Below, one piece after another: positions 1 to 14,799 of a DNA stretch of 14,799 nt. The translations under genes were made by a program, and so were the position numbers. Positions within the stretch are counted from its first letter, which is position 1. Each line of letters starts with the position of its first letter. A model generated the notes under the pieces. It was not told where the DNA came from and ran no database searches. It worked only from the letters and a program-made list of their open reading frames with translations. Source of the stretch: Utricularia gibba (lineage: Eukaryota; Plantae; Magnoliophyta); NCBI GenBank assembly GCA_002189035.1, contig NEEC01000379.1, forward strand, positions 1 to 14,799, written 5' to 3'.

Positions 1-3000
1 CGAGAGTTAGTTGTAGCTCGGAAAATAAAGTGATATATTTATTAACGTTCAGTTTTTGGGGGCTGCCTACATGGTTTTTCAAGGAACAGCTTCTCGTTTT
101 GTGGCGGCAGTCTCGCTGGGAACTTGGTCCTGACCCCGATTCTGTATGGCTCATGAGGTCAACCGGATGAAATCGATTAAAGAAAATGATGCCTTTCTTT
201 AAATTACGATATCACGTGCACCCCACATGATTTTTTCAACAACTTGCTTTATACTTGTGAGGCGGTCTTGGGGTGCACCTGGAACGGGACAAAGGTCAGG
301 TTTGGCTTGCGCCTAGAGTTAGTTGTAACACGGAAATAAAGTGATGTATTTATTAACGTTCAGTTTTGGGGGCTACCTACATGGTTTTTCAAGAAACAGC
401 TTCTCGTTTTGTGGCGGCCAGTCTCGCTGGGAACTTGGTCCTTGACCGCGATTATGTATGCTCATGAGGTCAACCGGATGGAAATCGATTAAAGAAAATG
501 ATGCCTTTCTTTAAATTACGATATCACGTGCACCCCACATGATTTTTTCAACAACTTGCTTTATACTTGTGGAGGCGGTCTTGGGGTGCACCTGGAACGG
601 GACAAAGGTCAGGTTTGGCTTGCGCAGAGAGTTAGTTGTAACACGGCAAATAAAGTGATGTATTTATTAACGTTCAGTTTTCGGGGCTGCCTACATGGTT
701 TTTCAAGGAACAGCTTCTCGTTTTGTGGCGGCCAGTCTCGCTGGGAACTTGGTCCTTGACCGCGATTATGTATGGCTCATGAGGTCAACCGGATGCAAAT
801 TGATTAAAAAAAATGATGCCTTTGTTTAAATTACGATATCACGTGCACCCCACATGATTTTTCGACAACTTACTTTATACTTGAGGAGGCGGTCTTGGGT
901 GCACCTAGAACGGGACAAAGGTCAGGTTTGGCTTGCGTTGAGAGTTAGTTGTTGCTCGGAAAATAAAGTGATGTATTTATTAACGTTCAGTTTTGGGGGC
1001 TGCCTACATGGTTTTTCAAGGAACAGCTTCTCGTTTTGTGGCGGCCAGTCTCGCTGGGAACTTGGTCCTTGACCCGATTATGTATGCTCATGAGGTCAAC
1101 CGGATGCAAATTGATTAAAAAAAATGATGCCTTTGTTTAAATTACGATATCACGTGCACCCACATGATTTTTTCGACAACTTACTTTATACTTGAGGAGG
1201 CGGTCTTGGGGTGCACCTAGAACGGGACAAAGGTCAGGTTTGGCTTGCGCGAGAGTTAGTTGTAGCTCGGAAAATAAAGTGATATATTTATTAACGTTCA
1301 GTTTTTGGGGGCTGCCTACATGGTTTTTCAAGGAACAGCTTCTCGTTTTTGTGGCGGCAGTCTCGCTGGGAACTTGGTCCTGACCCCGATTCTGTATGGC
1401 TCATGAGGTCAACCGGATGGAAATCGATTAAAGAAAATGATGCCTTCTTTAAATTACGATATCACGTGCACCCACATGATTTTTTCAACAACTTGCTTTA
1501 TACTTGTGAGGCGGTCTTGGGGTGCACCTGGAACGGGACAAAGGTCAGGTTTGGCTTGCGCCTAGAGTTAGTTGTAACACGGAAAATAAAGTGATGTATT
1601 TATTAACGTTCAGTTTTTGGGGCTACCTACATGGTTTTTCAAGAAACAGCTTCTCGTTTTTGTGGCGGCCAGTCTCGCTGGGAACTTGGTCCTTGACCCG
1701 ATTATGTATTGCTCATGAGGTCAACCGGATGCAAATTGATTAAAAAAAAATGATGCCTTTGTTTAAATTACGATATCACGTGCACCCACATGATTTTTTC
1801 AACAACTTACTTTATACTTGAGGAGGCGGTCTTGGGGTGCACCTAGAACGGGACAAAGGTCAGGTTTGGCTTGCGCCGAGAGTTAGTTGTAGCCCGGCAA
1901 AAATGTGATGTATTTCTTAACGTTCGGTTTTCGGGGGCTGCCTACATGGTTTTTCAAGGAACAGCTTCTCGTTTTGTGGCGGCCAGTCTCACTAGGAACT
2001 TGGTACGGGCCCCCGATTCTTTATGGCTCATGAGGTCAACCGGATGCAAATTGATTAAAAAAATGATGCCGTTGTTTAAATTACGATATCACGTGCACCC
2101 CACATGATTTTTTCGACAACTTACTTTATACTTGAGGAGGCGGTCTTGGGGTGCACCTAGAACGGGACAAAGGTCAGGTTTGGCTTGCGCCGAGAGTTAG
2201 TTGTAGCTCGGAAAATAAAGTGATATATTTATTAACGTTCAGTTTTTGGGGGCTGCCTACATGGTTTTTCAAGGAACAGCTTCTCGTTTTTTGTGGCGGC
2301 GAGTCTCGCTGGGAACTTGGTCCTTGACCCCGATTATGTATGGCTCATGAGGTCAACCGGATGGAAATCGATTAAGAAAATGATGCCTTTGTTTAAATTA
2401 CGATATCACGTGCACCCTACATGATTTTTTCAACAACTTACTTTATACTTGAGGAGGCGGTCTTGGGGTGCACCTGGAACGGGACAAAGGTCAGGTTTGG
2501 CTTGCGCCGAGAGTTAGTTGTAGCTCGGAAAATAAAGTGATATATTTATTAACGTTCAGTTTTGGGGCTGCCTACATGGTTTTTCAAGGAACAGCTTCTC
2601 GTTTTTGTGGCGGCAGTCTCGCTGGGAACTTGGTCCTTGACCCCGATTATGTATGGCTCGTGAGGTCAACCGGATGGAAATCGATTAAGGAAAATGATGC
2701 CTTTGTTTAAATTACGATATCACGTGCACCCTACATGATTTTTTCAACAACTTACTTTATACTTGAGGAGGCGGTCTTGGGGTGCACCTGAACGGGACAA
2801 AGGTCAGGTTTGGCTTGCGCCGAGAGTTAGTTGTAGCTCGGCAAATAAAGTGATGTATTTATTAACGTTCAGTTTTTGGGGGCTGCCTACATGGTTTTTC
2901 AAGGAACAGCTTCTCGTTTTTGTGGCGGCCAGTCTCGCTAGGAACTTGGTCCTTGACCCGATTCTGTATGGCTCATGAGGTCAACCGGATGGAAATCGAT

Positions 3001-4565
3001 TAAAGAAAATGATGCCTTTCTTTAAATTACGATATCACGTGCACCCCACATGATTTTTTCAACAACTTGCTTTATACTTGTGGAGGCGGTCTTGGGTGCA
3101 CCTGGAACGGGACAAAGGTCAGGTTTGGCTTGCGCAGAGAGTTAGTTGTAACACGGCAAATAATGTGATGTATTTATTAACGTTCAGTTTTCGGGGGCTG
3201 CCTACATGGTTTTGCAAGGAACAGCTTCTCGTTTTGTGGCGGCCAGTCTCGCTGGGAACTTGGTCCTTGACCGCGATTATGTATGGCTCATGAGGTCAAC
3301 CGGATGCAAATTGATTAAAAAAAATGATGCCTTTGTTTAAATTACGATATCACGTGCACCCCACATGATTTTTTCAACAACTTACTTTATACTTGAGAGG
3401 CGGTCTTTGGGTGCACTTGGAACCGGAAAAAGATCAGCTTAGGCCTTGGCCCAAAGTAAGTTGTAGACCGGCAAAGAAAGTGATGTATTTATTAACGTTC
3501 GGTTTTCGGTTTTGCCTACATGGTTTTTCAAGGAACAGCTTCTCGTTTTGTGGCGGCCAGTCTCGCTTGGAACTTGGTCCTTCACCCCGATTCTGTATGG
3601 CTCATGAGGTCAACCGGATGCAAATCGATTAAAAAACTGATGCCTTTGTTTAAATTACGATATCACATGCACCCCACATGATTTTTTAAACAACTTGCTT
3701 TATACTTGTGGAGGCGGTCTTGGGGTGCACCTGGAACGGGACAAAGGTCAGGGTCAGCTTGGGCCGAGAGTTAGTTGTAGCCCGGCAAATAAAATGTTGG
3801 TCCGGGCCCCCGATTCTTTATGACTCATGAGGACAAAGGATGCAAATCGATGAATACAATGATGCATTTGTTTAAATGACGATATCACGTGCACCCTACA
3901 TGATTTTTTCAACAACTTACTTTATACTTGAGGAGGTGGTCTTGGGGGGCAAGGGGAACCGGAAAAAGGTCAGCTTAGGCTTGGGCCGAAAGTAAGTTGT
4001 AGCCCGGCAAATAAAGTGATGTATTTCTTAACGTTTGGTTTTCGGGGTTGCCTACATGGTTTTCAAGGTACAGCTTCTTGTTTTGTGGCGGCCAGTCTCA
4101 CTAGGAACTTGGTCCGGGCCCCCGATTCTTTATGGCTCATGAGTACAAAGGATGCAAATCGATGAATACAATGATGCATTTGTTTAAATTACGATATCAC
4201 GTGCATCCTACATGATTTTTTCAACAACTTACTTTATACTTGAGGAGGTGCTCTTCGGGGCAAGAGGAACCGGAAAGAGGTCAGCTTAGGCTTGGGCTGA
4301 AAGTAAGTGTTATCCCGGCAAAGAAAGTGATGTATTTATTAACGTTCGGTTTTCAGGGTTGCCTTTATGGTTTTACAAGGTACAACTTCCCGTTTTGTGG
4401 CGGCCAGTCTCACTAGGAACTTGGTCCGGGCCCCCGATTCTTTATGCCTCATGAGGACAAAGGATGCAAATCGATGAATACAATGATGCATTTTTAAATT
4501 ACGATATCACGTGCACCCTACATGATTTTTTCAACAACTTACTTTATACTTGAGGAGGTGGTCTT
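1..4565. repeat. Tandem satellite array, left block (~14.5 monomers of ~310-317 bp; variant A 1-~3350, transition ~3351-3885, variant B ~3886-4565)
   Basis: The motif CACGTG in ttacgatatCACGTGcacc recurs at 213, 525, 840, 1151, 1463, 1777, 2090, 2407, 2721, 3036, 3351, 3664 (as CACATG), 3886, 4198 and 4508. Spacings are 310-317 bp except one 222-bp unit. Confidence 0.97.
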
Positions 4566-4839
4566 CGATGTGTCCCTCTAATCTATAGAGATTAGCAACC
4601 CACAAAAAAGAGGTGATTTTGAAGCTTAGAAGAGAACCCACCGAAGTCTACCCTCAAGAGAATAAATCTCTTGCAACCAGACTTCGAAACAAAGAAAATT
4701 AGGAGCCACACTTCAGAAAGAGAGATTGATTGGAAGTGATAATCCTAGAACGCCACAAGCTCAAAGCTTGATAAGTTAAGAGTGTTCAAGCACTCAAAGG
4801 AGAGGGGAATCCTCACAAGATACATAAAATGACCAAAGA
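4566..4839 (-). repeat. 3' LTR, distal part (putative R/U5, 274 bp), separated from the rest by the nested solo LTR
   Basis: Matches 11294-11567 apart from a few substitutions and two 1-bp indels. The terminal base reads C (cgatg) instead of T (tgatg), so the true LTR start may be 4567. Confidence 0.93.
4835..4839. repeat. Target site duplication AAAGA, left copy, of the nested solo LTR
   Basis: acc-AAAGA-TGATGAGCC. The uninterrupted LTR reads acc-AAAGA-tcctg at 11560-11572. Confidence 0.92.
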
Positions 4840-5441
4840 TGATGAGCCCCAGGAAGATAATGAAGTGTATTTGAAGAATGATGAGGAGTTTGTTCAAGTG
4901 AACAAATTAGAAAGAAAGATGTTTCCACCAGGACCAATGACTAGGAGCAAGACAAAGATGGTTGAAGATACACTTAAGGGTCTACTCAATACCATTGGAA
5001 TCAAAGATGGGCTTGAAGACATCCATCAAAAGAGGTCAACTACTTGAAGATGGACTTAACTTAGAGCATTGGGCTTGTTAGACTTTTCTATTTCATTTAG
5101 TTTGGACTATGTAATGTTAGAGCTCAATTCTAGAGTATATTTACTCTAGAGATGTACTAATTCAGGATCTTTGGTCATTTTATGTATCTTGTGAGATTCC
5201 TCTCTCCTTTGAGTGCTTGAACACTCTTAACTTATCAAGCTTTGAGCTTGTGGCGTTCTAGGATTATCACTTCCAATCAATCTCTCTTTTCTGAAGTGTG
5301 GCTCCTAATTTTCTTTGTTTCGAAGTCTGGTTGCAAGAGATTTATTCTCTTGAGGGTAGACTTCGGTGGGTTCTCTTCTAAGCTTCAAAATCACCTCTTT
5401 TTTGTGGGTTGCTAATCTCTATAGATTAGAGGGTCACATCA
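4840..5441 (+). mobile_element. Solo LTR (602 bp) of the same family, inverted relative to the host element
   Basis: Starts TGATGAGCCC, ends GGTCACATCA. It is the reverse complement of 11294-11896 with about two substitutions and one 1-bp deletion by eye, is flanked by a 5-bp direct repeat, and has no adjacent PBS or PPT. Confidence 0.95.
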
Positions 5442-5446
5442 AAAGA
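5442..5446. repeat. Target site duplication AAAGA, right copy
   Basis: CACATCA-AAAGA-tcctgaattag. Confidence 0.92.
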
Positions 5447-5775
5447 TCCTGAATTAGTACATCTCTAGAGTATTTATACTCTAGAATTGGGCTCTAACAT
5501 TACATAGTCCAAACTAAATGAAATAGAAAAGTCTAACAAGCCCAATGCTCTAAGTTAAGTCCATCTTCAAGTAGTTGACCTCTTTTGATGGGATGTCTTC
5601 AAGCCCATCTTTGATTCCAATGGTATTGAGTAGACCCTTAAGTGTATCTTCAACCATCTTTGTCTTGCTCCTAGTCATTGGTCCTGGTGGAATCATCTTT
5701 CTTTCTAATTTGTTCACTTGAACAAACTCCTCATCATTCTTCAAATACACTTCATTATCTTCCTGGGGCTCATCA
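5447..5775 (-). repeat. 3' LTR, proximal part (putative U3, 329 bp)
   Basis: Matches 11568-11896; 5491-5775 looks identical by eye. Ends gggctCATCA and abuts the PPT. 274 + 329 = 603 bp, equal to the 5' LTR. Confidence 0.95.
5464..5485 (-). promoter_or_regulatory. Candidate TATA box (TATAAATA on minus strand, 5471-5478) inside a short inverted repeat in the 3' LTR
   Basis: tctagagtat-tt-atactctaga. The homologous sites at 5129-5150 and 11585-11606 read TATATTTA in LTR sense. Promoter function is inferred from motif and position only. Confidence 0.5.
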
Positions 5776-5963
5776 TCCCCCCTTTCTTTACGAAGATTCG
5801 TCCCTGAATCTGTATCCATGTCGAAAAGAGACAAATCAGCAACATTGAAAGTTGAATGAACAGAATACTCACCTGGTAAATCTAGCTTGTACGCATTATC
5901 ATTAACGCGCTCAACAACTTGGAAAGGGCCATCTCCACGAGGTAGAAGTTTGGACTTTCTCTT
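5550..5963 (-). CDS. pol: Integrase C-terminal region with CR-motif-like putative targeting domain; last 226 nt lie inside the 3' LTR
   Basis: [14 protein letters not shown]...AYKLDLP...HSTFNVADL...[19 protein letters not shown] in ORF 5550-6077; the part upstream of ~5963 is out of frame. Confidence 0.85.
5776..5789 (-). other. Polypurine tract (PPT)
   Basis: Minus strand reads AAAGAAAGGGGGGA, 14 purines immediately before TGATG of the 3' LTR. Confidence 0.92.
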
Positions 5964-6703
5964 TTGTGGGAAATCTCTCCTTCCTAAGATGAAGCCAAAC
6001 CCAATCTCCAGGTTCAAATACAACTTTGCGTCTCCCCTTGTTTGCTGCTGATGCATACTTTGCATTGTTGCATTCAATCTGTTGTTTCACCTTTTCATGC
6101 AATCTTCTGATTGCATCAGCTCTCTTCTTGCCATCTAAACTAACTTTCTCATCACAAGGCAAACGTAACATATCCAAAGGTGTAAGAGGATTAAAACCAT
6201 AAACGACTTCAAATGGAGATAATTTAGTAGTTAGATGCATGGTTCTATTGTAAGCAAACTCAACAAGTGGCAAACATTCCTCCCAAGTCTTAAGATTTGA
6301 TTTAATCATAATCCTAAGTAAGGTAGAAAGTGTGCGATTAGTTACCTCAGTTTGCCCATCGGTTTGAGGGTGACATATTGTTGAGTATAACAGCTTAGTG
6401 CTAAGTTTACTCCAAAGAACTCTCCAAAAGTGACTAAGAAACCTTGCATCTCGATCAGAGACAATAGTTAGGGGCATACCATGAAGTCTAACAACTTCCC
6501 TAAAGAAGAGATCAGCCACATGAGATGCATCATCAGTTTTATGGCAGGGAATAAAGTGTGCCATCTTTGAAAACCTGTCCACAACAACGAAAATTGAATC
6601 TCTACCCCTTTGGGTACGAGGTAAGCCTAAAACAAAGTCCATAGAAATGTCCACCCATGGTTGGGAAGGAGTAGGGAGTGGAGTATACAAACCATTAGGG
6701 CAG
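5963..6703 (-). CDS. pol: Integrase catalytic core fragment (rve-type, D,D35E)
   Basis: [31 protein letters not shown] in ORF 5911-6690; ends set by inferred frameshifts. Confidence 0.93.
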
Positions 6704-7360
6704 TGGTTGATTTAGCCTTCCTACAAGAGATACATCTAGAACAAATTCTTTCAACATCCCTTCTCATGTGTGGCCAAAAGAAATGTTGGGTGAGAGTATC
6801 AAGAGTCTTTTTAACACCAAAATGTCCCATTAGTCCCCCACCATGAGCTTCTCTAACAATCAAATCACGTATGGAGCAAGAAGGAATGCACAGCCTATCT
6901 TTCCTATAAAGAAAACCATCTTTCCTGAAGAATAGCCCAGATGTAGCAAGTTCACATGCCTTATAAATATCCCCAAAATCGTGATCATGAACATATAAGT
7001 CAATGATGGAAGCAAATCCAAGAATTCTTGCATCAAGATTGGCTAAGAGAGTGTACCTTCGAGATAAAGCATCAGCAACCACATTCTCCTTACCTTTCTT
7101 GTATTTGATCACATATGGGAATGTGTCAATGAATTCCACCCACTTAGCATGTCTTCTATTCAGCTTTACTTGAGCCTTCAAATGTTTGAGAGACTCATGA
7201 TCAGTGTGTATCACGAACTCCTTAGGCCATAAGTAGTGCTGCCATGTCTCCAAAGCTCTAACCAACGCATACAACTCTTTGTCATATGTTGGATAGTTGA
7301 GGGTGGCACCATGAAGCTTCTCACTAAAATAAGCAAGTGGACGTCCCTTTTGCATCACAC
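6703..7360 (-). CDS. pol: RNase H C-terminal part and integrase HHCC zinc-binding domain fragment
   Basis: [23 protein letters not shown]; [12 protein letters not shown]...CISC in ORF 6627-7370. Confidence 0.93.
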
Positions 7361-7714
7361 ACAGTACCAATCCCTAAACCTGATGCATCACATTCAATTT
7401 CAAAAGTATCAGAAAAATTTGGAAGTGCTAGGAGAGGTGTTGAGCAAAGCTTCTTGAGTTGTTTGAAAGCATGTTCCTGCTCATCTCCCCAATGAAATGC
7501 ATGATTTTTCTTGATCAACTGGGTGAGGGGTGCTGCTATAGAACTGAAGTCCCTAACAAACCGTCTATAGAAACTTGCTAAACCATGAAAACTCCTAACT
7601 TCACCCACTGATGTAGGTGTTGGCCATTCTTGATTTGCTCTTACTTTCTCTTCATCCACAGCTACTCCTGCATTACTTACAACATATCCAAGAAAAGAGA
7701 CACTATTTGTGCAA
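7360..7714 (-). CDS. pol: RT thumb/connection and start of RNase H fragment
   Basis: [38 protein letters not shown] in ORF 7324-7722. Confidence 0.92.
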
Positions 7715-9165
7715 AGACACACTTTTTGATATTAGCAAACAACTTCTCTTTTCTAAGAGTATCTAACACATCTTTCAAATGCCCTATATGTTCCTCAATA
7801 CTTTTACTATAGATCAGAATATCATCAAAATAAACAACAACAAATCTACCTATAAAAGGCCTAAGAACGTGATTCATCAATCTCATAAAGGTGCTAGGAG
7901 CATTGGTTAACCCAAAAGGCATAACAACCCACTTATACAAACCAAACTTAGTTTTAAAAGCAGTTTTCCACTCATCACCTTCCTTCATTCTAATCTGATG
8001 ATATCCACTTCTCAAATCAATCTTACTAAAAACACAAGCACCATGCAATTCATCAAGCATATCTTCAAGTCTAGGGATAGGATGTCTATACTTGATTGTG
8101 ATGTTGTTGATGGCGCGACAATCAGTGCACATCCGCCAAGTTCCATCAGACTTTGGAACCAATAACACCGGCACCGAGCAAGGACTCATGCTCTCACGCA
8201 CAAATCCTTTAGACACCAATTCCTCAACTTGTTTTTGTATTTCCTTCGTCTCCTCTGGATTGGCTCGGTATGCTGGTCGGTTTGGGAGTTGTGCTCTAGG
8301 GACAAGGTCAATTTGATGCTCAATCCCTCTAAGGGGAGGTAAGCCTTGAAGTTCTTCTGGAAAAACATCTTCATATACATGTAAGAGAGACACAACACAA
8401 GATGGAATGGATGAAGCATGGTTAGGTGAAGTATGAACTTCATCCTTATACATGAGTAGAATGAATGGTTGCCTAGCATAAAGTAAGTGTCTAATCTCAC
8501 TTGGCCTTGCTAATAGACTCTCATTCTTTCTCTCAATTCCTAAAACTCTCATGTTTTCACTCTCTGTTTTGTGCTCATTTTCATCCTTTTTTTCACTCAA
8601 TTCCTTGCCATCTCTTCTTTTTTCTCCACTTTTTCGCATCTTTTTTTCACTCATTTTCACTTCACTCATCTCTTCTCCCTTACGAACGACCACCTTGTGC
8701 TTTCCATTATCAGTATGAAGGCCTCTAGCATCACTCAGAATTCTGACTTGATCTTCATGTGCCTCCTTTGGAGATAATGGAGCAAGTGTGATGGAGCGTC
8801 CATTATAATTGAAGGAATATTTGTTCTTGAAACCATCATGAAATGCTCTTCTATCATATTCCCAAGGTCTCCCAAGAAGAATATGGCTTGCATGCATAGG
8901 AACAACATCACATAGGACTTCATCTTCATATCTCCCTATGGAAAACGTCACAAGCACTTGTTTGGTAACCTTTACCTCAATTACTTCATTGAACCACTGC
9001 AGATTGTAAGGCTTAGGATGCCTCACGGTGGGTAGTCCCAATTTCTCCACCAAGATGTTGCTAGCAACATTGGTGCAACTACCTCCATCAATAATCAGGC
9101 TGCAAACTTTCCTATTAACAAAGCATCGGGTTTGAAACAAGTTCTCCCTTTGCTCTTCATTTATC
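7714..9165 (-). CDS. pol: Aspartic protease plus reverse transcriptase fragment
   Basis: Protease LIIDGGSCTN; RT motifs DLRSGYHQIRM, VMPFGLTNAPSTF and YFDDILIYS in ORF 7677-9140. Confidence 0.95.
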
Positions 9166-9294
9166 CTTCACCCAATGTTAAGCGTCCTTCGAGTGACTAA
9201 TACTTCTCCAGAAACAGGCAATTCATCCTCATCACTCACTTCAGCTTCTGTCTCCACTAGATCATCATCATCTTCACTAACAACTTCGCCATTG

Positions 9295-9540
9295 CCCTAA
9301 TCACCATTGCTCGTTTATTTGGGCATTCAGAAGCAATATGTCCAAGTCCCAAGCATTTGAAACATTTTATGTTTCTGGTAGTTCCCTTTGGAGGTGTTGT
9401 TCGCTCCCCTTGCTTGGAACTTGATTGGATGTCGAATTTGAAGTGTTCCATGGATGACTTCCCTTTATTTCTCTCCATCATCTCATTGGTGCCCCCAAAT
9501 TTCGAACCAGAAGTCCTCTTGTTGAAATCTCTGCGAAACT
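9295..9540 (-). CDS. gag: Gag nucleocapsid fragment with CCHC zinc knuckle
   Basis: CFKCLGLGHIASEC (Cx2Cx4Hx4C) in ORF 9257-9481; the frame is open upstream through FRRDFNKRTSGSKFGGTNE to ~9540. Confidence 0.88.
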
Positions 9541-9627
9541 CTTGCTAGATAGTTGTTTCTCAACCTTTGTGGCCATATGAATCATGTCCTCCATCTCAAT
9601 GTAGTGATGAAGCTCCACAATATTTGC

Positions 9628-10463
9628 ATCTCCTTATTCATCCCATGAAGAAACCTAGCCATAGTTGCTTCTCTATCTTCCTGAACATGAGCTCTAATCA
9701 GTAAAATCTCCATTTCCTGCCAATATTCCTCCACTGGCCTTGAGCCCTGCTTGAGATTTTGCAAACGTTGATAAACATCTCTTTGGTAATGGTTTGGAAC
9801 AAACCGCCTCCTCATAACTTTTTTCATCTCAACCCAAGTGTGAATTGGTTCTTCAGAGTCAATCCTTCTTTTAGCCACCAATTGATCCCACCAAATGATA
9901 GCATACTCACTAAATTCCATGGAGGCCAATCTGATTTTCTTTTCGTCAGAGAAGGTGTTGCAATCAAAGACATGTTCTACTCTTGTTTCCCATTGGAGAT
10001 ATGCATCTGGATCATTCTTTCCTTGAAATTGAGGTATCTTCATCTTGATGTTGTTAACATCCTTTCCAATTCTTCCTCCGTCTCTTCTACCTCCCTGATC
10101 TCGAAATCTTCTTGTATCCCCATGCACAAAATCATTTTCACTATATTCAATGTAGTCATCTTCTTCATCATTATTCAGGGTTCGATCTCTTCTTCCAACA
10201 GTCCTTGCACTTCGTTGATCACTTAAGTCATGTTCAGTGTTGATGCGTTGATGCAATTGACTACCTCGACCCCTTCCAGCAGCATAATTATCTTGTCTTC
10301 GTGCTCTTGCAACATTTTGCAAAGAATTTTCGTGTTCATCAAGCCTGACATTTATGTTTTCCAGAATGCGATGCAATCTAGTGAACTCCTGTTGCATAGC
10401 TTTCAAAGTGAACCTCCCATCCGGTGAGTCATCCTTTTCATGCTCACTTCTGGAATTTGACAT
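9628..10463 (-). CDS. gag: Gag capsid-type domain fragment
   Basis: KIPQFQGKNDPDAYLQWE, AIIWWDQL, LQNLKQGSRPVEEY, ATMARFLHG in ORF 9582-10496. A 1-bp frame break near 9628 restores KEIANIVELHHY. Confidence 0.9.
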
Positions 10464-11147
10464 GCTAAATACTGGACAAAAGAAAACGAGCAGCAAGGAA
10501 GAAAAGAGACTAAACTAAAAAGAACAAAGAAACACACACAAGATTTACCACTCAATACTCAAGCTTCAAGTCCTTGATGCACTCTTTAATGTCATCATGC
10601 TTGTTCTCATGGCATCTAACGAATTAATCACTTCCAGATTGGTATTGATTATAGTGTAATGATGGAGTTAGGTGAGGGTGGCAGTATTAATAGTCTCAAG
10701 ATGGAGACAAAGGGAAGTGTTTAAATTAAATTGGTTGCTTGTTGGAATAGATAAATAGGAAGGATGGACAACAAGGTAAGAACAGATGAAATCAGAGAAT
10801 AGAGCACTACACACGAAATGTGTTGCTTGCTAAACTATAGAAATACAGAAATGGGCAATCAACAAAGAGAATAGTCAAATGGAAAGGTGGGGACACGTGA
10901 ATGACAGGGGATGGGAATTGAAGATAAGAAAAACAACAATAAAGTGGTTGGTTGGTGGAATGGGAAAAGTAGAGAGGTGGGCCACAATTTAAACATACAT
11001 AATAATGGATGATAGTGATGAGTAATGGATATTCACCTTCACACTCCTTATCCTCTTGCACACTTGAAAATGATATTCAATGTGTTCTTGCTATTCAATT
11101 GACACTCAATTTCGAGCTCTTCTTCAATCAACTTCCTGTGACCTCCC

Positions 11148-11216
11148 TTTTTTTTTTTGTACTAAAGCCAAAAGTAATAAGGACTTGGCTTGAACGATTT
11201 TTTTTTTTTTTTTTTT
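11148..11216 (-). repeat. Two homopolymer runs in the 5' leader (T11 at 11148-11158, T19 at 11198-11216; A-runs in element sense)
   Basis: Directly visible. Confidence 0.9.
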
Positions 11217-11278
11217 GAATAGGCAGGAATGGAAGAACTCAAAAAGAACTGGATAATAATAAGGATAAGGAACCCAAA

Positions 11279-11290
11279 GCTCTGATACCA
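11279..11290 (-). other. Primer binding site complementary to tRNA-iMet
   Basis: Minus strand TGGTATCAGAGC, 3 nt after the CATCA end of the 5' LTR. Confidence 0.96.
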
Positions 11291-11293
11291 AAA

Positions 11294-11896
11294 TGATGTG
11301 ACCCTCTAATCTATAGAGATTAGCAACCCACAAAAAAGAGGTGATTTTGAAGCTTAGAAGAGAACCCACCGAAGTCTACCCTCAAGAGAATAAATCTCTT
11401 GCAACCAGACTTCGAAACAAAGAAAATTAGGAGCCACACTTCAGAAAAGAGAGATTGATTGGAAGTGATAATCCTAGAACGCCACAAGCTCAAAGCTTGA
11501 TAAGTTAAGAGTGTTCAAGCACTCAAAGGAGACAGGAATCTCACAAGATACATAAAATGACCAAAGATCCTGAATTAGTACATCTCTAGAGTAAATATAC
11601 TCTAGAATTGAGCTCTAACATTACATAGTCCAAACTAAATGAAATAGAAAAGTCTAACAAGCCCAATGCTCTAAGTTAAGTCCATCTTCAAGTAGTTGAC
11701 CTCTTTTGATGGGATGTCTTCAAGCCCATCTTTGATTCCAATGGTATTGAGTAGACCCTTAAGTGTATCTTCAACCATCTTTGTCTTGCTCCTAGTCATT
11801 GGTCCTGGTGGAATCATCTTTCTTTCTAATTTGTTCACTTGAACAAACTCCTCATCATTCTTCAAATACACTTCATTATCTTCCTGGGGCTCATCA
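11294..11896 (-). repeat. 5' LTR, intact, 603 bp
   Basis: Terminal inverted repeat TGATG...CATCA; followed by the PBS in element sense; homologous to the split LTR and the solo LTR. Confidence 0.96.
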
Positions 11897-14799
11897 GAAA
11901 GTGATGTATTTCTTAACATTCGGTTTCGGGGTTGCCAACATGGTTTTTCAAGGAAACAGGTTCTCGTTTTGAGGCGGCCAGTATCGCAAGGAACTTGGTC
12001 CGGGCCCCTGATTCTTTATGGCTCATGAGGACAAAAGGATGCAAATCGATGAAATAAATGATGCATTTGTTTAAATTACGATATCACGTGCACCCTACAT
12101 GATTTTTTCAACAACTTACTTTATACTTTAGGTGGTGGTCTTGGGGGGCAAGAGGAACCAGACAACGGTCACCTTAAGTTTTGGCCGAAAGTAGGTTGCA
12201 GCCCGGCAAAGAAAGTGATGTATGTATTAACGTTCGGTTTTCGGGGTTGCTTACATGGTTTTTCAAGGAACAACTTCTGCTTTAGTGGCGGCCCCCGCTA
12301 GGAACTTGGTCCGGGCCCCTGATTCTTATGGCTCATGAGGACAAAGGATGCAAATCGATGAATAATGTGATGCATTTGTTTAAATTACGATATCACGTGC
12401 ACCCTCCATGATTTTTTAAACAACTTACTATATCCTTGACGAGGTGGTCTTGGGGGGAAGAGGAACGGGAAAAAGGTTAGCTTAGGCTTGGGCCGAAAGT
12501 AAGTTGTAGCCCGTCAATTAAAGTGATGTCTTTATGAAGGTTCGGTTTTCAGGGTTGCCTACATGGTTTTTCAAGGAACATCTTCTCGTTTTGTGGCAGC
12601 CAGTCTCGCTGGGAACTTGGTTCAGGACCCCGATTCTGTATGGCTCATGGGGTCAACCGGATGCAAATCGATGAAAAAAAATGATGCATTTGCTTAAATT
12701 ACGATATCACGTGCACCCTACATGACTTTTTCAACAATTTACTTTATACTTGAGGAGGTGGTCTTGGGGGAGGAACCGGATAAAAGTCAGCATAGGCTTG
12801 GGCCGAAAGTAAGTTTTATCTCGGCAAAGAAAGTGATGTATTTATTAACGTTCGGTTTTCGGGGGTTGCCTACATGCTGTTTCAAGGGACAGCTTCTCGT
12901 TTTGTGGCGGCTAGTCTCGTTGGGAACACGTCCTAGAACCCGATTCTGTATGGCTCATGGGGTCAACCGGATGCAAATCGATGAATACAATGATGCATTT
13001 GTTTAAATTACGATATCACGTGCACCCTACATCATTTTTTCAACAACATACTTTATACTTGAGGAGGTGGTCTTGGGGGGGAGAGGAACCGGAAAAAGGT
13101 CAGCTTAGACTTGGGCCGAAAGTAAGTTGTAGCCCGGCAAATAAAGTGATGTATTTATTAAGGTTCGGTTTTCGGGGTTGCCAACATGGTTTTTAAAGGA
13201 ACAGCTTCTCGTTTTGTGGCGCCCTGTATCGCATGGAACTTGGTCCGGGCCCCTAATTCTTTATGGCTCATGAGGACAAAGGATGCAAATCGATGAAAAA
13301 ATGATGCATTTGTTTAAATTACGATATCACGTGCACCCTACATGATTTTTTCAACAACTTACTTTATACTTGAGGAGGTGGTCTTGGGGGCAAGGGGAAC
13401 CGGAAAAAGGTCAGCTTAGGCTTGGGCCGAAAGTAAGTTGTAGCCCGGCAAATAAAGTGATGTATTTATTAACATTCAGTTTTCGGGGGCTGCCTACATG
13501 GTTTTTCAAGGAATATCTTCTCGTTTTGTGGCGGCCAGTCTCACTAGGAACTTGGTCCGGGCCCCCGATTCTTTATGGCTCATGAGTACAAAGGATGCAG
13601 TTCGATGAATACAATGATGCATTTGTTTAAATTACGATATCACGTGCACCCTACATCATTTTTCAATAACGTACTTTATACTTGAGGAGGTGGTCTTGGG
13701 GGCAAGAGGAACCGGACAAAGGTCAGTATAGGCTTTGGCCGAAAGTAAGTTGTAGCCCGGCAAATAAAGTGATGTTTCTTAACGTTCGCTTTTCGGGGTT
13801 GCCTACATGGTTTTTCAAGGAACATCTTCTCGTTTTTTGGCGGCAAGTCTCGTTGGGAACCTAATCCTAGACCCTGATTCTGTATGGCTCATGGGGTCAA
13901 CCGGATGCAAATCGATGAATACAATGATGCATTTGTTTAAATTACGATATCACGTGCACCCTACATAATTTTTCAATAACGTACTATATACTTGAGAGGT
14001 GGTCTTGGGGGGAAGAGGAACCGGACAAAGGTCAGCATAGGCTTTGGCGAAAGTAAGTTGTAGCCCGGCAAAGAAAGTGATGTATGTATTAACGTTCGGT
14101 TTTCGAGGTTGCTTACATGGTTTTTCATGGAACAACTTCTCCTTTACTGGCGGCCAGTCTCGCTAGGAAATTGGACCGGGCCCTGATTCTTTATGGCTCA
14201 TGAGGACAAAGGATGCAAATCGATGACTATAATGATGCATTTGTTTAAATTACGATATCACGTGCACCCTACATCATTTTTTCAACAACATACTTTATAC
14301 TTGAGGAGGTGGTGTTCCGGGGCAAGGGGAACCGGAAAAAGGTCAGCTTAGGCTTGGGCCGAAAGTAAGTTGTAGCCCGGCAAATAAAGTGATGTATTTC
14401 TTAACGTTCGGTTTTCGGGTTGCCTACATGGTTTTTCAAGGTACAGCTTCTCGTTTTGTGGCGCCCTGTATCGCATGGAACTTGGTCCGGCCCCTAATTC
14501 ATTATGGCTCATGAGGACAAAGGATGCAATTCGATGAAAAAAATGATGCATTTGTTTAAATTACGATATCACGTGCACCCTACATGATTTTCAACAACTT
14601 ACTTTATACTTGAGGATGGTGTTGGGGCAAGAGGAACCGGAAAAAGGTCAGCTTAGGCTTGGGCCGAAAGTAAGTTGTAGCCCGTCAAAGAAAGTGATGT
14701 ATTTCTTAACGTTCGGTTTTCAGGGGTGCCTACATGGTTTTTCAAGGAATCTTCTCGTTTTGTGGCGGCCAGTCTCACTAGGAACTTGGTCCGGGCCCC
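11897..14799. repeat. Tandem satellite array, right block (~9.4 monomers of ~308-314 bp, variant B type)
   Basis: CACGTG recurs at 12085, 12394, 12708, 13017, 13328, 13641, 13951, 14259 and 14570; same orientation as the left block. Confidence 0.97.

What the first reader, a model, noticed from the sequence alone, without database searches (positions are those of the whole stretch)
4566..5775. Interleaved inverted repeats could make this locus a hairpin-RNA silencer of its own family
Seen: the order is A, B', A', B. 4840-5167 is the reverse complement of 5447-5775 (~328 bp) and 4566-4839 is the reverse complement of 5168-5441 (274 bp); pairing both gives a pseudoknot-like topology. A minus-strand element transcript would pass U3, then antisense LTR, and fold into a near-perfect ~330-bp stem that includes the integrase CR-motif coding sequence. 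Established: the maize Mu killer inverted-repeat locus silences MuDR in trans through hairpin-derived siRNAs. Inference: this could be an analogous self-made killer allele for a centromeric retrotransposon, targeting both its promoter and its targeting domain. There is no expression evidence in the sequence.
Basis: inference. Interest (0 to 1): 0.75.

Follow-up and report, generated by a model that had tools for sequence, protein, structure and literature searches.

The report
Inverted solo LTR inside retrotransposon LTR
A plant centromere-type retrotransposon carries a second, flipped copy of its own end-repeat inserted into one of its end-repeats; this ordinary nested insertion could fold into a long RNA hairpin, but nothing in the sequence shows that it silences anything.

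Summary
The order is A (4566-4839), B' (4840-5167), A' (5168-5441), B (5447-5775), and both arm pairs are about 98% complementary.

The cause is ordinary. A 602-bp solo LTR (4840-5441, TG..CA) lies inverted inside the 3' LTR of a minus-strand Ty3/gypsy element (4566-11896). That element is embedded in a 312-bp satellite. The solo LTR is flanked by a perfect 5-bp target-site duplication, AAAGA, and the element's other LTR (11294-11896) preserves the unoccupied site.

The element shows the group A CRM hallmarks: TGATG..CATCA ends, a tRNA-Met primer site, an A-run in the leader, and coding that runs 225 nt into the LTR and includes a GPMTR (CR-type) block. Its genes are broken, and it has no target-site duplication of its own.

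A read-through minus-strand RNA would fold in silico into a 334-bp stem (-741 kcal/mol). Transcription, siRNAs and trans-silencing cannot be tested here. An AAUAAA lies before the second arm.

The idea that an antisense self-insertion makes an LTR hairpin is already published for EVD in Arabidopsis.

The scan noted the same 1209-base structure on three other pieces of this genome, which I could not read.

Verdict: a real structure of known kind, with its proposed function unproven.

The parts
1..4565 (.). Left flank: tandem satellite, period 312-315 bp
   Evidence: TRF rows 1-3793 (315 bp, 93% matches) and 3797-4567 (312 bp); direct-repeat families D1-D10.
4566..4839 (-). A: outer part (presumed R-U5) of the split 3' LTR of the host element; its first base reads C instead of T
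   Evidence: Direct copy of 11294-11568 (D12, D13). With 5447-5775 it makes up a 603-bp LTR with 9 differences from the right LTR.
4835..4839 (.). Target-site duplication copy 1 (AAAGA)
   Evidence...GACCAAAGA|TGATGAG...; the intact site in the right LTR reads ACCAAAGATCC.
4840..5441 (+). Solo LTR of the same family (B'A'), complete, TGATG..CATCA, sense on the + strand and so inverted relative to the host
   Evidence: 602 bp, 3 differences from rc of 11294-11896; I1 is 419 nt at 100%.
5129..5150 (+). Palindrome with a TATA-like core (TATATTTA) in the solo LTR. A promoter here would fire towards the host interior, antisense to it.
   Evidence: Read. The TATA-like motif is at LTR position 298-305; function is inferred only.
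5341..5346 (-). AAUAAA hexamer met by a read-through minus-strand RNA about 100 nt into the inverted LTR, before the second arm
   Evidence: antisense AATAAA at position 96 of each LTR copy; a consensus match only.
5442..5446 (.). Target-site duplication copy 2 (AAAGA)
   Evidence...CACATCA|AAAGATCCTG.
5447..5775 (-). B: inner part (presumed U3, with the integrase tail coding and the TATA-like palindrome at 5464-5485) of the split 3' LTR
   Evidence: Direct copy of 11568-11896 (D11). TATAAATA lies at LTR position 298 and the insertion site at positions 330-334.
5550..6077 (-). Last reading frame: integrase SH3-like domain plus the CR-type block [11 protein letters not shown] (about 5640-5690); the stop is 225 nt inside the LTR
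   Evidence: Pfam SH3_Tf2-1, E 9e-17; translation; P.GP[IVM]TR...K conserved in 11 relatives; GPMTRAR in the same place in group A CRM sequences of PMC3059260 Additional file 2.
5776..5789 (-). Polypurine tract AAAGAAAGGGGGGA directly upstream of the 3' LTR
5776..11293 (-). Internal region: gag, protease, RT, RNase H, integrase. Several in-frame stops lie in 9141-9581, and four frame switches lie near 7700, 7350, 6650 and 6000.
   Evidence: ORF list, Pfam hits, frames and stops.
11198..11216 (-). A-run (19 A) in the 5' leader
   Evidence: an A-rich stretch is a group A CRM feature per PMC3059260.
11279..11290 (-). Primer binding site TGGTATCAGAGC (tRNA-Met type), 3 nt after the 5' LTR
11294..11896 (-). 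Intact 5' LTR of the host element (603 bp, TGATG..CATCA); it holds the unoccupied insertion site
11897..14799 (.). Right flank: the same satellite, period 311 bp
   Evidence: TRF row 11898-14799. The flank starts about 65 bp further along the monomer than the left flank ends.

Best explanation
The interleaved inverted repeat is the scar of an ordinary nested insertion. The resident copy is a centromere-type Ty3/gypsy retrotransposon with group A CRM features, on the minus strand (4566-11896), lying in a 312-bp satellite. A sister copy of the same family integrated into its 3' LTR in the opposite orientation, 25-32 nt downstream of the TATA-like palindrome, at about the U3/R border. This made the 5-bp duplication AAAGA. 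The newcomer then lost its interior and one LTR by recombination between its own two LTRs, which left a complete 602-bp solo LTR (4840-5441). Because the insert is a whole LTR placed inside an LTR, the order A, B', A', B follows automatically. The structure, the insertion mechanism and the in-silico fold are shown. The U3/R assignment, and the view that the locus has no dedicated function, are inferred. If RNA crosses the locus it would give double-stranded RNA that joins the general small-RNA pool of an already repeat-rich region. It would not act as a special switch.
For: The insert has full-length LTR ends TGATG..CATCA, is flanked by AAAGA on both sides, and the other LTR reads ACCAAAGATCC uninterrupted. 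A plus B rebuild a 603-bp LTR. The host has a PBS, a PPT and the gag-PR-RT-RH-INT order. The family features match PMC3059260. Same-family nesting ('autoinsertion') is frequent in Ty3/gypsy families (PMC6911290). The scan noted the same kind of structure on three other pieces of this genome.
Against: The full-length intermediate (newcomer with two LTRs) is inferred, not seen. LTRs are not the commonest nesting target (PMC6911290 abstract). The solo LTR is closer to the host's 5' LTR (3 differences) than the host's two LTRs are to each other (9). The host also has no target-site duplication. So the history involves at least one more event: inter-element recombination, a flank deletion or gene conversion. 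The absence of function is an inference and cannot be shown from sequence.
Confidence: 0.85

Rival explanations
1. One reading: the locus is a natural 'killer' allele. A transcript from the host's 5' LTR, or from the satellite, reads through U3 into the antisense LTR and folds into a ~330-bp hairpin. Dicer products then direct methylation of the family's promoter and cleavage of its integrase tail in trans.
For: The arms cover the presumed promoter region and the coding tail. The predicted stem has 334 pairs at -741 kcal/mol, against about -280 for shuffles. CRM elements are generally transcribed and give 24-nt small RNAs (PMC3059260). The same logic has been proposed for an EVD antisense self-insertion (PMC11624286).
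Against: There is no expression or small-RNA evidence. AAUAAA at 5346->5341 lies before the second arm. The host copy is dead and sits in a satellite, so it may not be transcribed by Pol II. Small RNAs from CRM elements were rare, and their numbers were similar in Arabidopsis RNAi mutant lines, in PMC3059260. Nested inverted copies are common in such regions, so this locus has no special status. In the EVD study the hairpin was not tested, and the LTR siRNAs in that individual were predominantly 24 nt, whereas hairpins usually give several siRNA sizes.
Confidence: 0.08
2. Double-stranded RNA arises by convergent transcription instead of a hairpin. The solo LTR's own promoter (TATA-like at 5136-5143, + strand) drives RNA through 5442 onward, antisense to the host's U3 and integrase, and this RNA pairs with sense transcripts of the family.
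For: The solo LTR is complete and 99.5% identical to the intact 5' LTR, including the TATA-like palindrome. Convergent transcription is the alternative drawn for nested EVD.
Against: Promoter activity is inferred from a motif only. An LTR normally ends its own transcript in R/U5. No expression data exist.
Confidence: 0.04
3. The inverted LTR arose before integration, by aberrant reverse transcription or self-integration of the element's own DNA copy, so host and insert come from one event.
For: The insert is nearly identical to the host's 5' LTR (3 differences).
Against: A complete LTR with a precise 5-bp duplication is the signature of normal integration into double-stranded target DNA. Known self-integration products are circles or internally inverted molecules, not integrated linear copies (general knowledge of retroviral autointegration). 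The three LTR copies do not look equally old: private changes are split LTR 8, right LTR 1, solo 2, which under equal rates has p of about 0.03 (my own binomial calculation on the counts).
Confidence: 0.02
4. Assembly artefact: a fold-back chimeric long read produced a false inverted duplication.
For: Inverted duplications are a known long-read artefact. The region is repetitive, and the frame switches in the host could partly be indel errors.
Against: An artefact would not end exactly at TG and CA of a full LTR, would not duplicate exactly 5 bp of target, and would not carry its own substitutions.
Confidence: 0.01

Closest known systems
Group A CRM-clade centromeric retrotransposons (Neumann et al. 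2011, PMC3059260)
   Same: TGATG..CATCA LTR ends, tRNA-Met PBS, an A-rich stretch in the leader, a polyprotein running into the 3' LTR, a GPMTR-type block in the LTR-encoded integrase tail, and a position inside satellite arrays.
   Different: Placement of the RT in the CRM clade was not tested. The best protein relatives are only about 60-65% (RT) and about 50% (integrase tail) identical, so this is an undescribed family from an unidentified plant. This copy is coding-dead.
Solo LTRs from nested same-family insertions ('autoinsertions'; Jedlicka et al. 2019, PMC6911290)
   Same: A same-family element inserted into an older copy, with a target-site duplication, in a Ty3/gypsy family.
   Different: Here the target is an LTR, which that survey found to be an uncommon target. 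The insert is inverted and reduced to a solo LTR, and this is what makes the interleaved repeat.
Antisense nested EVD self-insertion in Arabidopsis (PMC11624286)
   Same: An LTR retrotransposon inserted antisense into its own family, which puts LTRs in inverted orientation. It was proposed as a source of an LTR hairpin or of convergent transcripts that start transcriptional silencing.
   Different: EVD is a copia element, and the nested copy was full length with LTRs about 2-2.5 kb apart. Here the arms are 274-279 nt apart, and the insert is a solo LTR within an LTR. Neither case has shown small RNAs from the locus.
Mu killer of maize (Slotkin et al. 2005, as cited in PMC11624286)
   Same: An inverted duplication that includes the transposon's promoter-bearing end and part of its coding sequence, able to form a long hairpin.
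   Different: Mu killer is a partial inverted duplication of a DNA transposon. It has demonstrated transcription, hairpin small RNAs and heritable trans-silencing. None of these is known here, and the origin (integrase insertion plus solo-LTR formation) is different.

Membership tests
Group A CRM centromeric retrotransposon | Ty3/gypsy domain order gag-PR-RT-RNase H-integrase | tested here: met
   Pfam hits in that order on the minus strand: Retrotrans_gag, Asp_protease (weak), RVT_1, RT_RNaseH, Integrase_H2C2, rve, SH3_Tf2-1.
Group A CRM centromeric retrotransposon | RT falls in the CRM clade in a phylogeny | not tested
   No reference RT set can be handed to the tools by reference. Relatives from many angiosperms are 55-65% identical, which does not place the clade.
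Group A CRM centromeric retrotransposon | CR motif at the integrase C-terminus in place of a chromodomain | tested here: met
   [17 protein letters not shown]. P, T, R and K are invariant in 11 relatives. GPMTRAR sits at the same place in GlyT1 and another element of PMC3059260 Additional file 2. No chromodomain was hit in Pfam.
Group A CRM centromeric retrotransposon | Polyprotein coding extends into the 3' LTR | tested here: met
   The LTR starts at 5775 and the stop is at 5552-5550, so 225 nt lie inside the LTR.
Group A CRM centromeric retrotransposon | LTR ends TGATG / CATCA, tRNA-Met PBS, A-rich stretch in the leader | tested here: met
   compared with the text of PMC3059260.
Group A CRM centromeric retrotransposon | Centromeric location (FISH or CENH3 association) | not testable with these tools
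   It is only known to be embedded in a 312-bp tandem satellite.
Solo LTR left by a nested insertion | Complete LTR with TG..CA, flanked by a target-site duplication, with the empty site known | tested here: met
   602 bp, AAAGA on both sides, and an intact site in 11294-11896.
Mu killer-type hairpin silencer locus | Inverted duplication covering the element's promoter region | tested here: met
   Arms 4840-5172 and 5442-5775 include the TATA-like palindrome and the sequence upstream of it. The promoter assignment is inferred.
Mu killer-type hairpin silencer locus | A transcript that spans both arms | not testable with these tools
   No RNA data. An AAUAAA lies before the second arm.
Mu killer-type hairpin silencer locus | Hairpin-derived small RNAs and heritable silencing of active copies in trans | not testable with these tools
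   No small-RNA, methylation or genetic data.

The most novel reading that the evidence does not exclude
The composite LTR, seen here and noted on three other pieces of this genome, is transcribed. It then acts as a natural hairpin source of promoter- and integrase-tail-directed small RNAs that keeps this centromeric retrotransposon family silent. This would be a Mu killer equivalent for an LTR retrotransposon, possibly multiplied along with the satellite.
Probability: 0.06. Interest if true: 0.7.

Novelty: new member of a known kind. Interest (0 to 1): 0.2.

Why it matters
As it stands, this is a clean textbook example of how same-family nesting and solo-LTR formation build long inverted repeats in centromeric DNA. 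How silencing of an LTR retrotransposon family is first triggered is still open, and nested antisense copies are one proposed trigger (PMC11624286). A locus with short spacing, near-perfect arms and arm-specific variants would be a convenient place to test that idea with small-RNA and long-read RNA data. Without such data the locus adds no new principle.

Tried and rejected
1. The bacterial-type promoter and terminator scan found nothing and is not relevant to a plant element.

2. Two protein word searches aimed to name the species or a described family. The best hits were about 50% (integrase tail) and about 60-65% (RT) identical and came from many angiosperms, so neither species nor family could be named.

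3. A look-up of earlier notes by sequence was blank.

4. Placing the RT in a phylogeny against the alignment in PMC3059260 was not done, because those sequences cannot be passed by reference.

5. I considered that recombination between the inverted solo LTR and the 5' LTR had inverted the interior. I rejected this because the present order already gives a perfect duplication and a rebuilt LTR without any inversion.

6. I considered that a small loop inversion explains the AA/TT difference in the TATA palindrome. The letters do not fit that.

7. In one search the two halves of the split LTR were placed side by side inside a script, only to count differences.

Full report
**1. The observation**

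The repeat finder reports inverted pairs that tile 4564-5443 and 4838-5777 (I2, I4, I5, I6). Global alignments give 98.5% identity for 4840-5167 against the reverse complement of 5447-5775, and 98.2% for 4566-4839 against the reverse complement of 5168-5441.

Because the two pairings cross, they cannot both form in full. The minimum-energy fold of the minus-strand RNA 5775->4566 chooses the longer one: a 334-pair stem at -741 kcal/mol. Shuffles of the same sequence fold at about -280, and an internal stretch of equal length folds at -341.

**2. What the repeat is**

The window consists of three parts:
- a tandem satellite (1-4565, period 312-315 bp);
- a 7.3-kb insert (4566-11896);
- the same satellite again (11897-14799, period 311 bp).

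The insert is a Ty3/gypsy retrotransposon on the minus strand, with these features:
- Its 5' LTR is 11294-11896 (603 bp, TGATG..CATCA).
- The primer site TGGTATCAGAGC lies at 11279-11290.
- A run of 19 A lies in the leader at 11198-11216.
- The polypurine tract AAAGAAAGGGGGGA lies at 5776-5789.

The 3' LTR is present as two halves, 4566-4839 and 5447-5775. Together they make 603 bp. Between them lies a complete 602-bp LTR of the same family in the opposite orientation (4840-5441), beginning TGATG and ending CATCA.

This insert is flanked by AAAGA on both sides (4835-4839 and 5442-5446). The intact 5' LTR reads ACCAAAGATCC at that point. That is the signature of an integrase-mediated insertion whose interior was later lost by LTR-LTR recombination, leaving a solo LTR. 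A whole LTR set inverted inside an LTR must give the order A, B', A', B, so the interleaving needs no further explanation.

**3. Where the insertion lies**

In LTR coordinates, the coding sequence ends at position 226. A 22-nt palindrome with a TATA-like core follows at 290-311. The core reads TATAAATA in the split copy and TATATTTA in the other two. The duplicated target is at 330-334.

The insertion is therefore 25-32 nt after the TATA-like motif, about where transcription would be expected to start.

**4. Family**

The text of Neumann et al. 2011 (PMC3059260) lists these features of group A CRM elements:
- TGATG/CATCA LTR ends;
- a tRNA-Met primer site;
- an A-rich stretch in the leader;

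All of these are met here. The LTR-encoded tail reads [17 protein letters not shown]. Eleven relatives from the protein search share P.GP[IVM]TR...K at that place. In the CRM sequences of that paper's Additional file 2, GPMTRAR follows shortly after the LTR start.

I did not place the RT in a phylogeny, and I cannot test centromeric location. The closest proteins are only 50-65% identical and come from many angiosperms, so the species and the family remain unnamed.

**5. State and history of the host copy**

Coding is broken. Several in-frame stops lie between gag and protease (9141-9581). The frame alternates 2, 2, 0, 2, 0, 2 over the six pieces, which means four frame switches, near 7700, 7350, 6650 and 6000.

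The host has no target-site duplication: GTCTT lies on the left and GAAAG on the right. About 65 bp of the satellite monomer is missing between the flanks.

Among the three LTR copies, the split LTR carries 8 private changes, the 5' LTR 1 and the solo LTR 2. Under equal rates such a skew has a probability of about 0.03 (my own binomial calculation). The host is therefore probably a recombinant of two elements, or it has suffered a flank deletion or gene conversion. This does not affect the reading of the inverted repeat.

**6. The hairpin-silencer idea**

The physical premise holds in silico, and CRM elements are generally transcribed and yield mostly 24-nt small RNAs. Against the idea:
- Nothing in the sequence shows transcription across the junctions.
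- An AAUAAA on the minus strand at 5346->5341 lies before the second arm.
- The small RNAs reported for CRM elements were rare, and their numbers were similar in Arabidopsis RNAi mutant lines.
- Same-family nesting is common.

The concept has already been stated for an LTR retrotransposon. Trasser et al. found an antisense nested EVD insertion and proposed an LTR hairpin or convergent transcription as a trigger of silencing, but did not test it (PMC11624286). I rate the silencer reading at under 10%.

**7. Other copies**

Earlier notes of this scan describe the same thing, each of 1209 letters, on three other pieces of this genome. A further note covers this very stretch. I could not read those other pieces.

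They may be duplicates of this locus. Other notes report retrotransposon fragments co-amplified with this satellite. Alternatively they may be haplotigs or independent events. Which of these holds is the most useful next question.

**8. Verdict**

The structure is real and precisely described. Its origin is ordinary and of a known kind. The proposed function is unproven and not new as a concept.

The window is plant DNA, and none of it looks human.

Noticed in passing
window 4561-4566 and 11897-11901: The host element has no target-site duplication (GTCTT or TCTTC against GAAAG). About 65 bp of the satellite monomer is missing between its flanks. Its first base reads C instead of T. It is probably a recombinant of two elements or has a flank deletion.
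   Followed up: partly
window 4566-5775 and 11294-11896: Private changes among the three LTR copies are split LTR 8, 5' LTR 1 and solo LTR 2. The host's two LTRs differ more from each other than the solo LTR differs from the 5' LTR. This fits a chimeric host or gene conversion between the inverted copies.
   Followed up: partly
window 5776-11293 (minus strand): Coding is destroyed by several in-frame stops in 9141-9581 and four frame switches, although the LTRs are 98.5-99.5% alike. This copy may belong to a non-autonomous lineage moved by proteins from other copies, or some indels may be assembly errors.
   Followed up: partly
window 5464-5485, 5129-5150, 11585-11606: A 22-nt palindrome, TCTAGAGTA....TACTCTAGA, surrounds the TATA-like core of the LTR. 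The core differs by an AA/TT pair between the split copy and the other two copies.
   Followed up: no
window 3585-4015: The satellite changes sub-variant here (GGAGGCGGTCTT on the left, GGAGGTGGTCTT on the right and beyond the element), at a shortened 222-bp unit. The left array is more uniform (93% matches) than the right one (86%).
   Followed up: no
window 11897-11912: The satellite reads TGATGTA next to the right junction. This resembles the LTR terminal heptamer TGATGTG and may be a coincidence.
   Followed up: no
other pieces of the same genome (notes s1-261650, s1-281471, s1-233716): Three other notes describe a 1209-base inverted solo LTR nested in a 3' LTR of the same family. I could not read them, so it is unknown whether they are copies of this locus.
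   Followed up: no
window 9759-10226 (+): A 155-aa open frame lies antisense to gag and has no Pfam match. It is probably a chance frame.
   Followed up: partly
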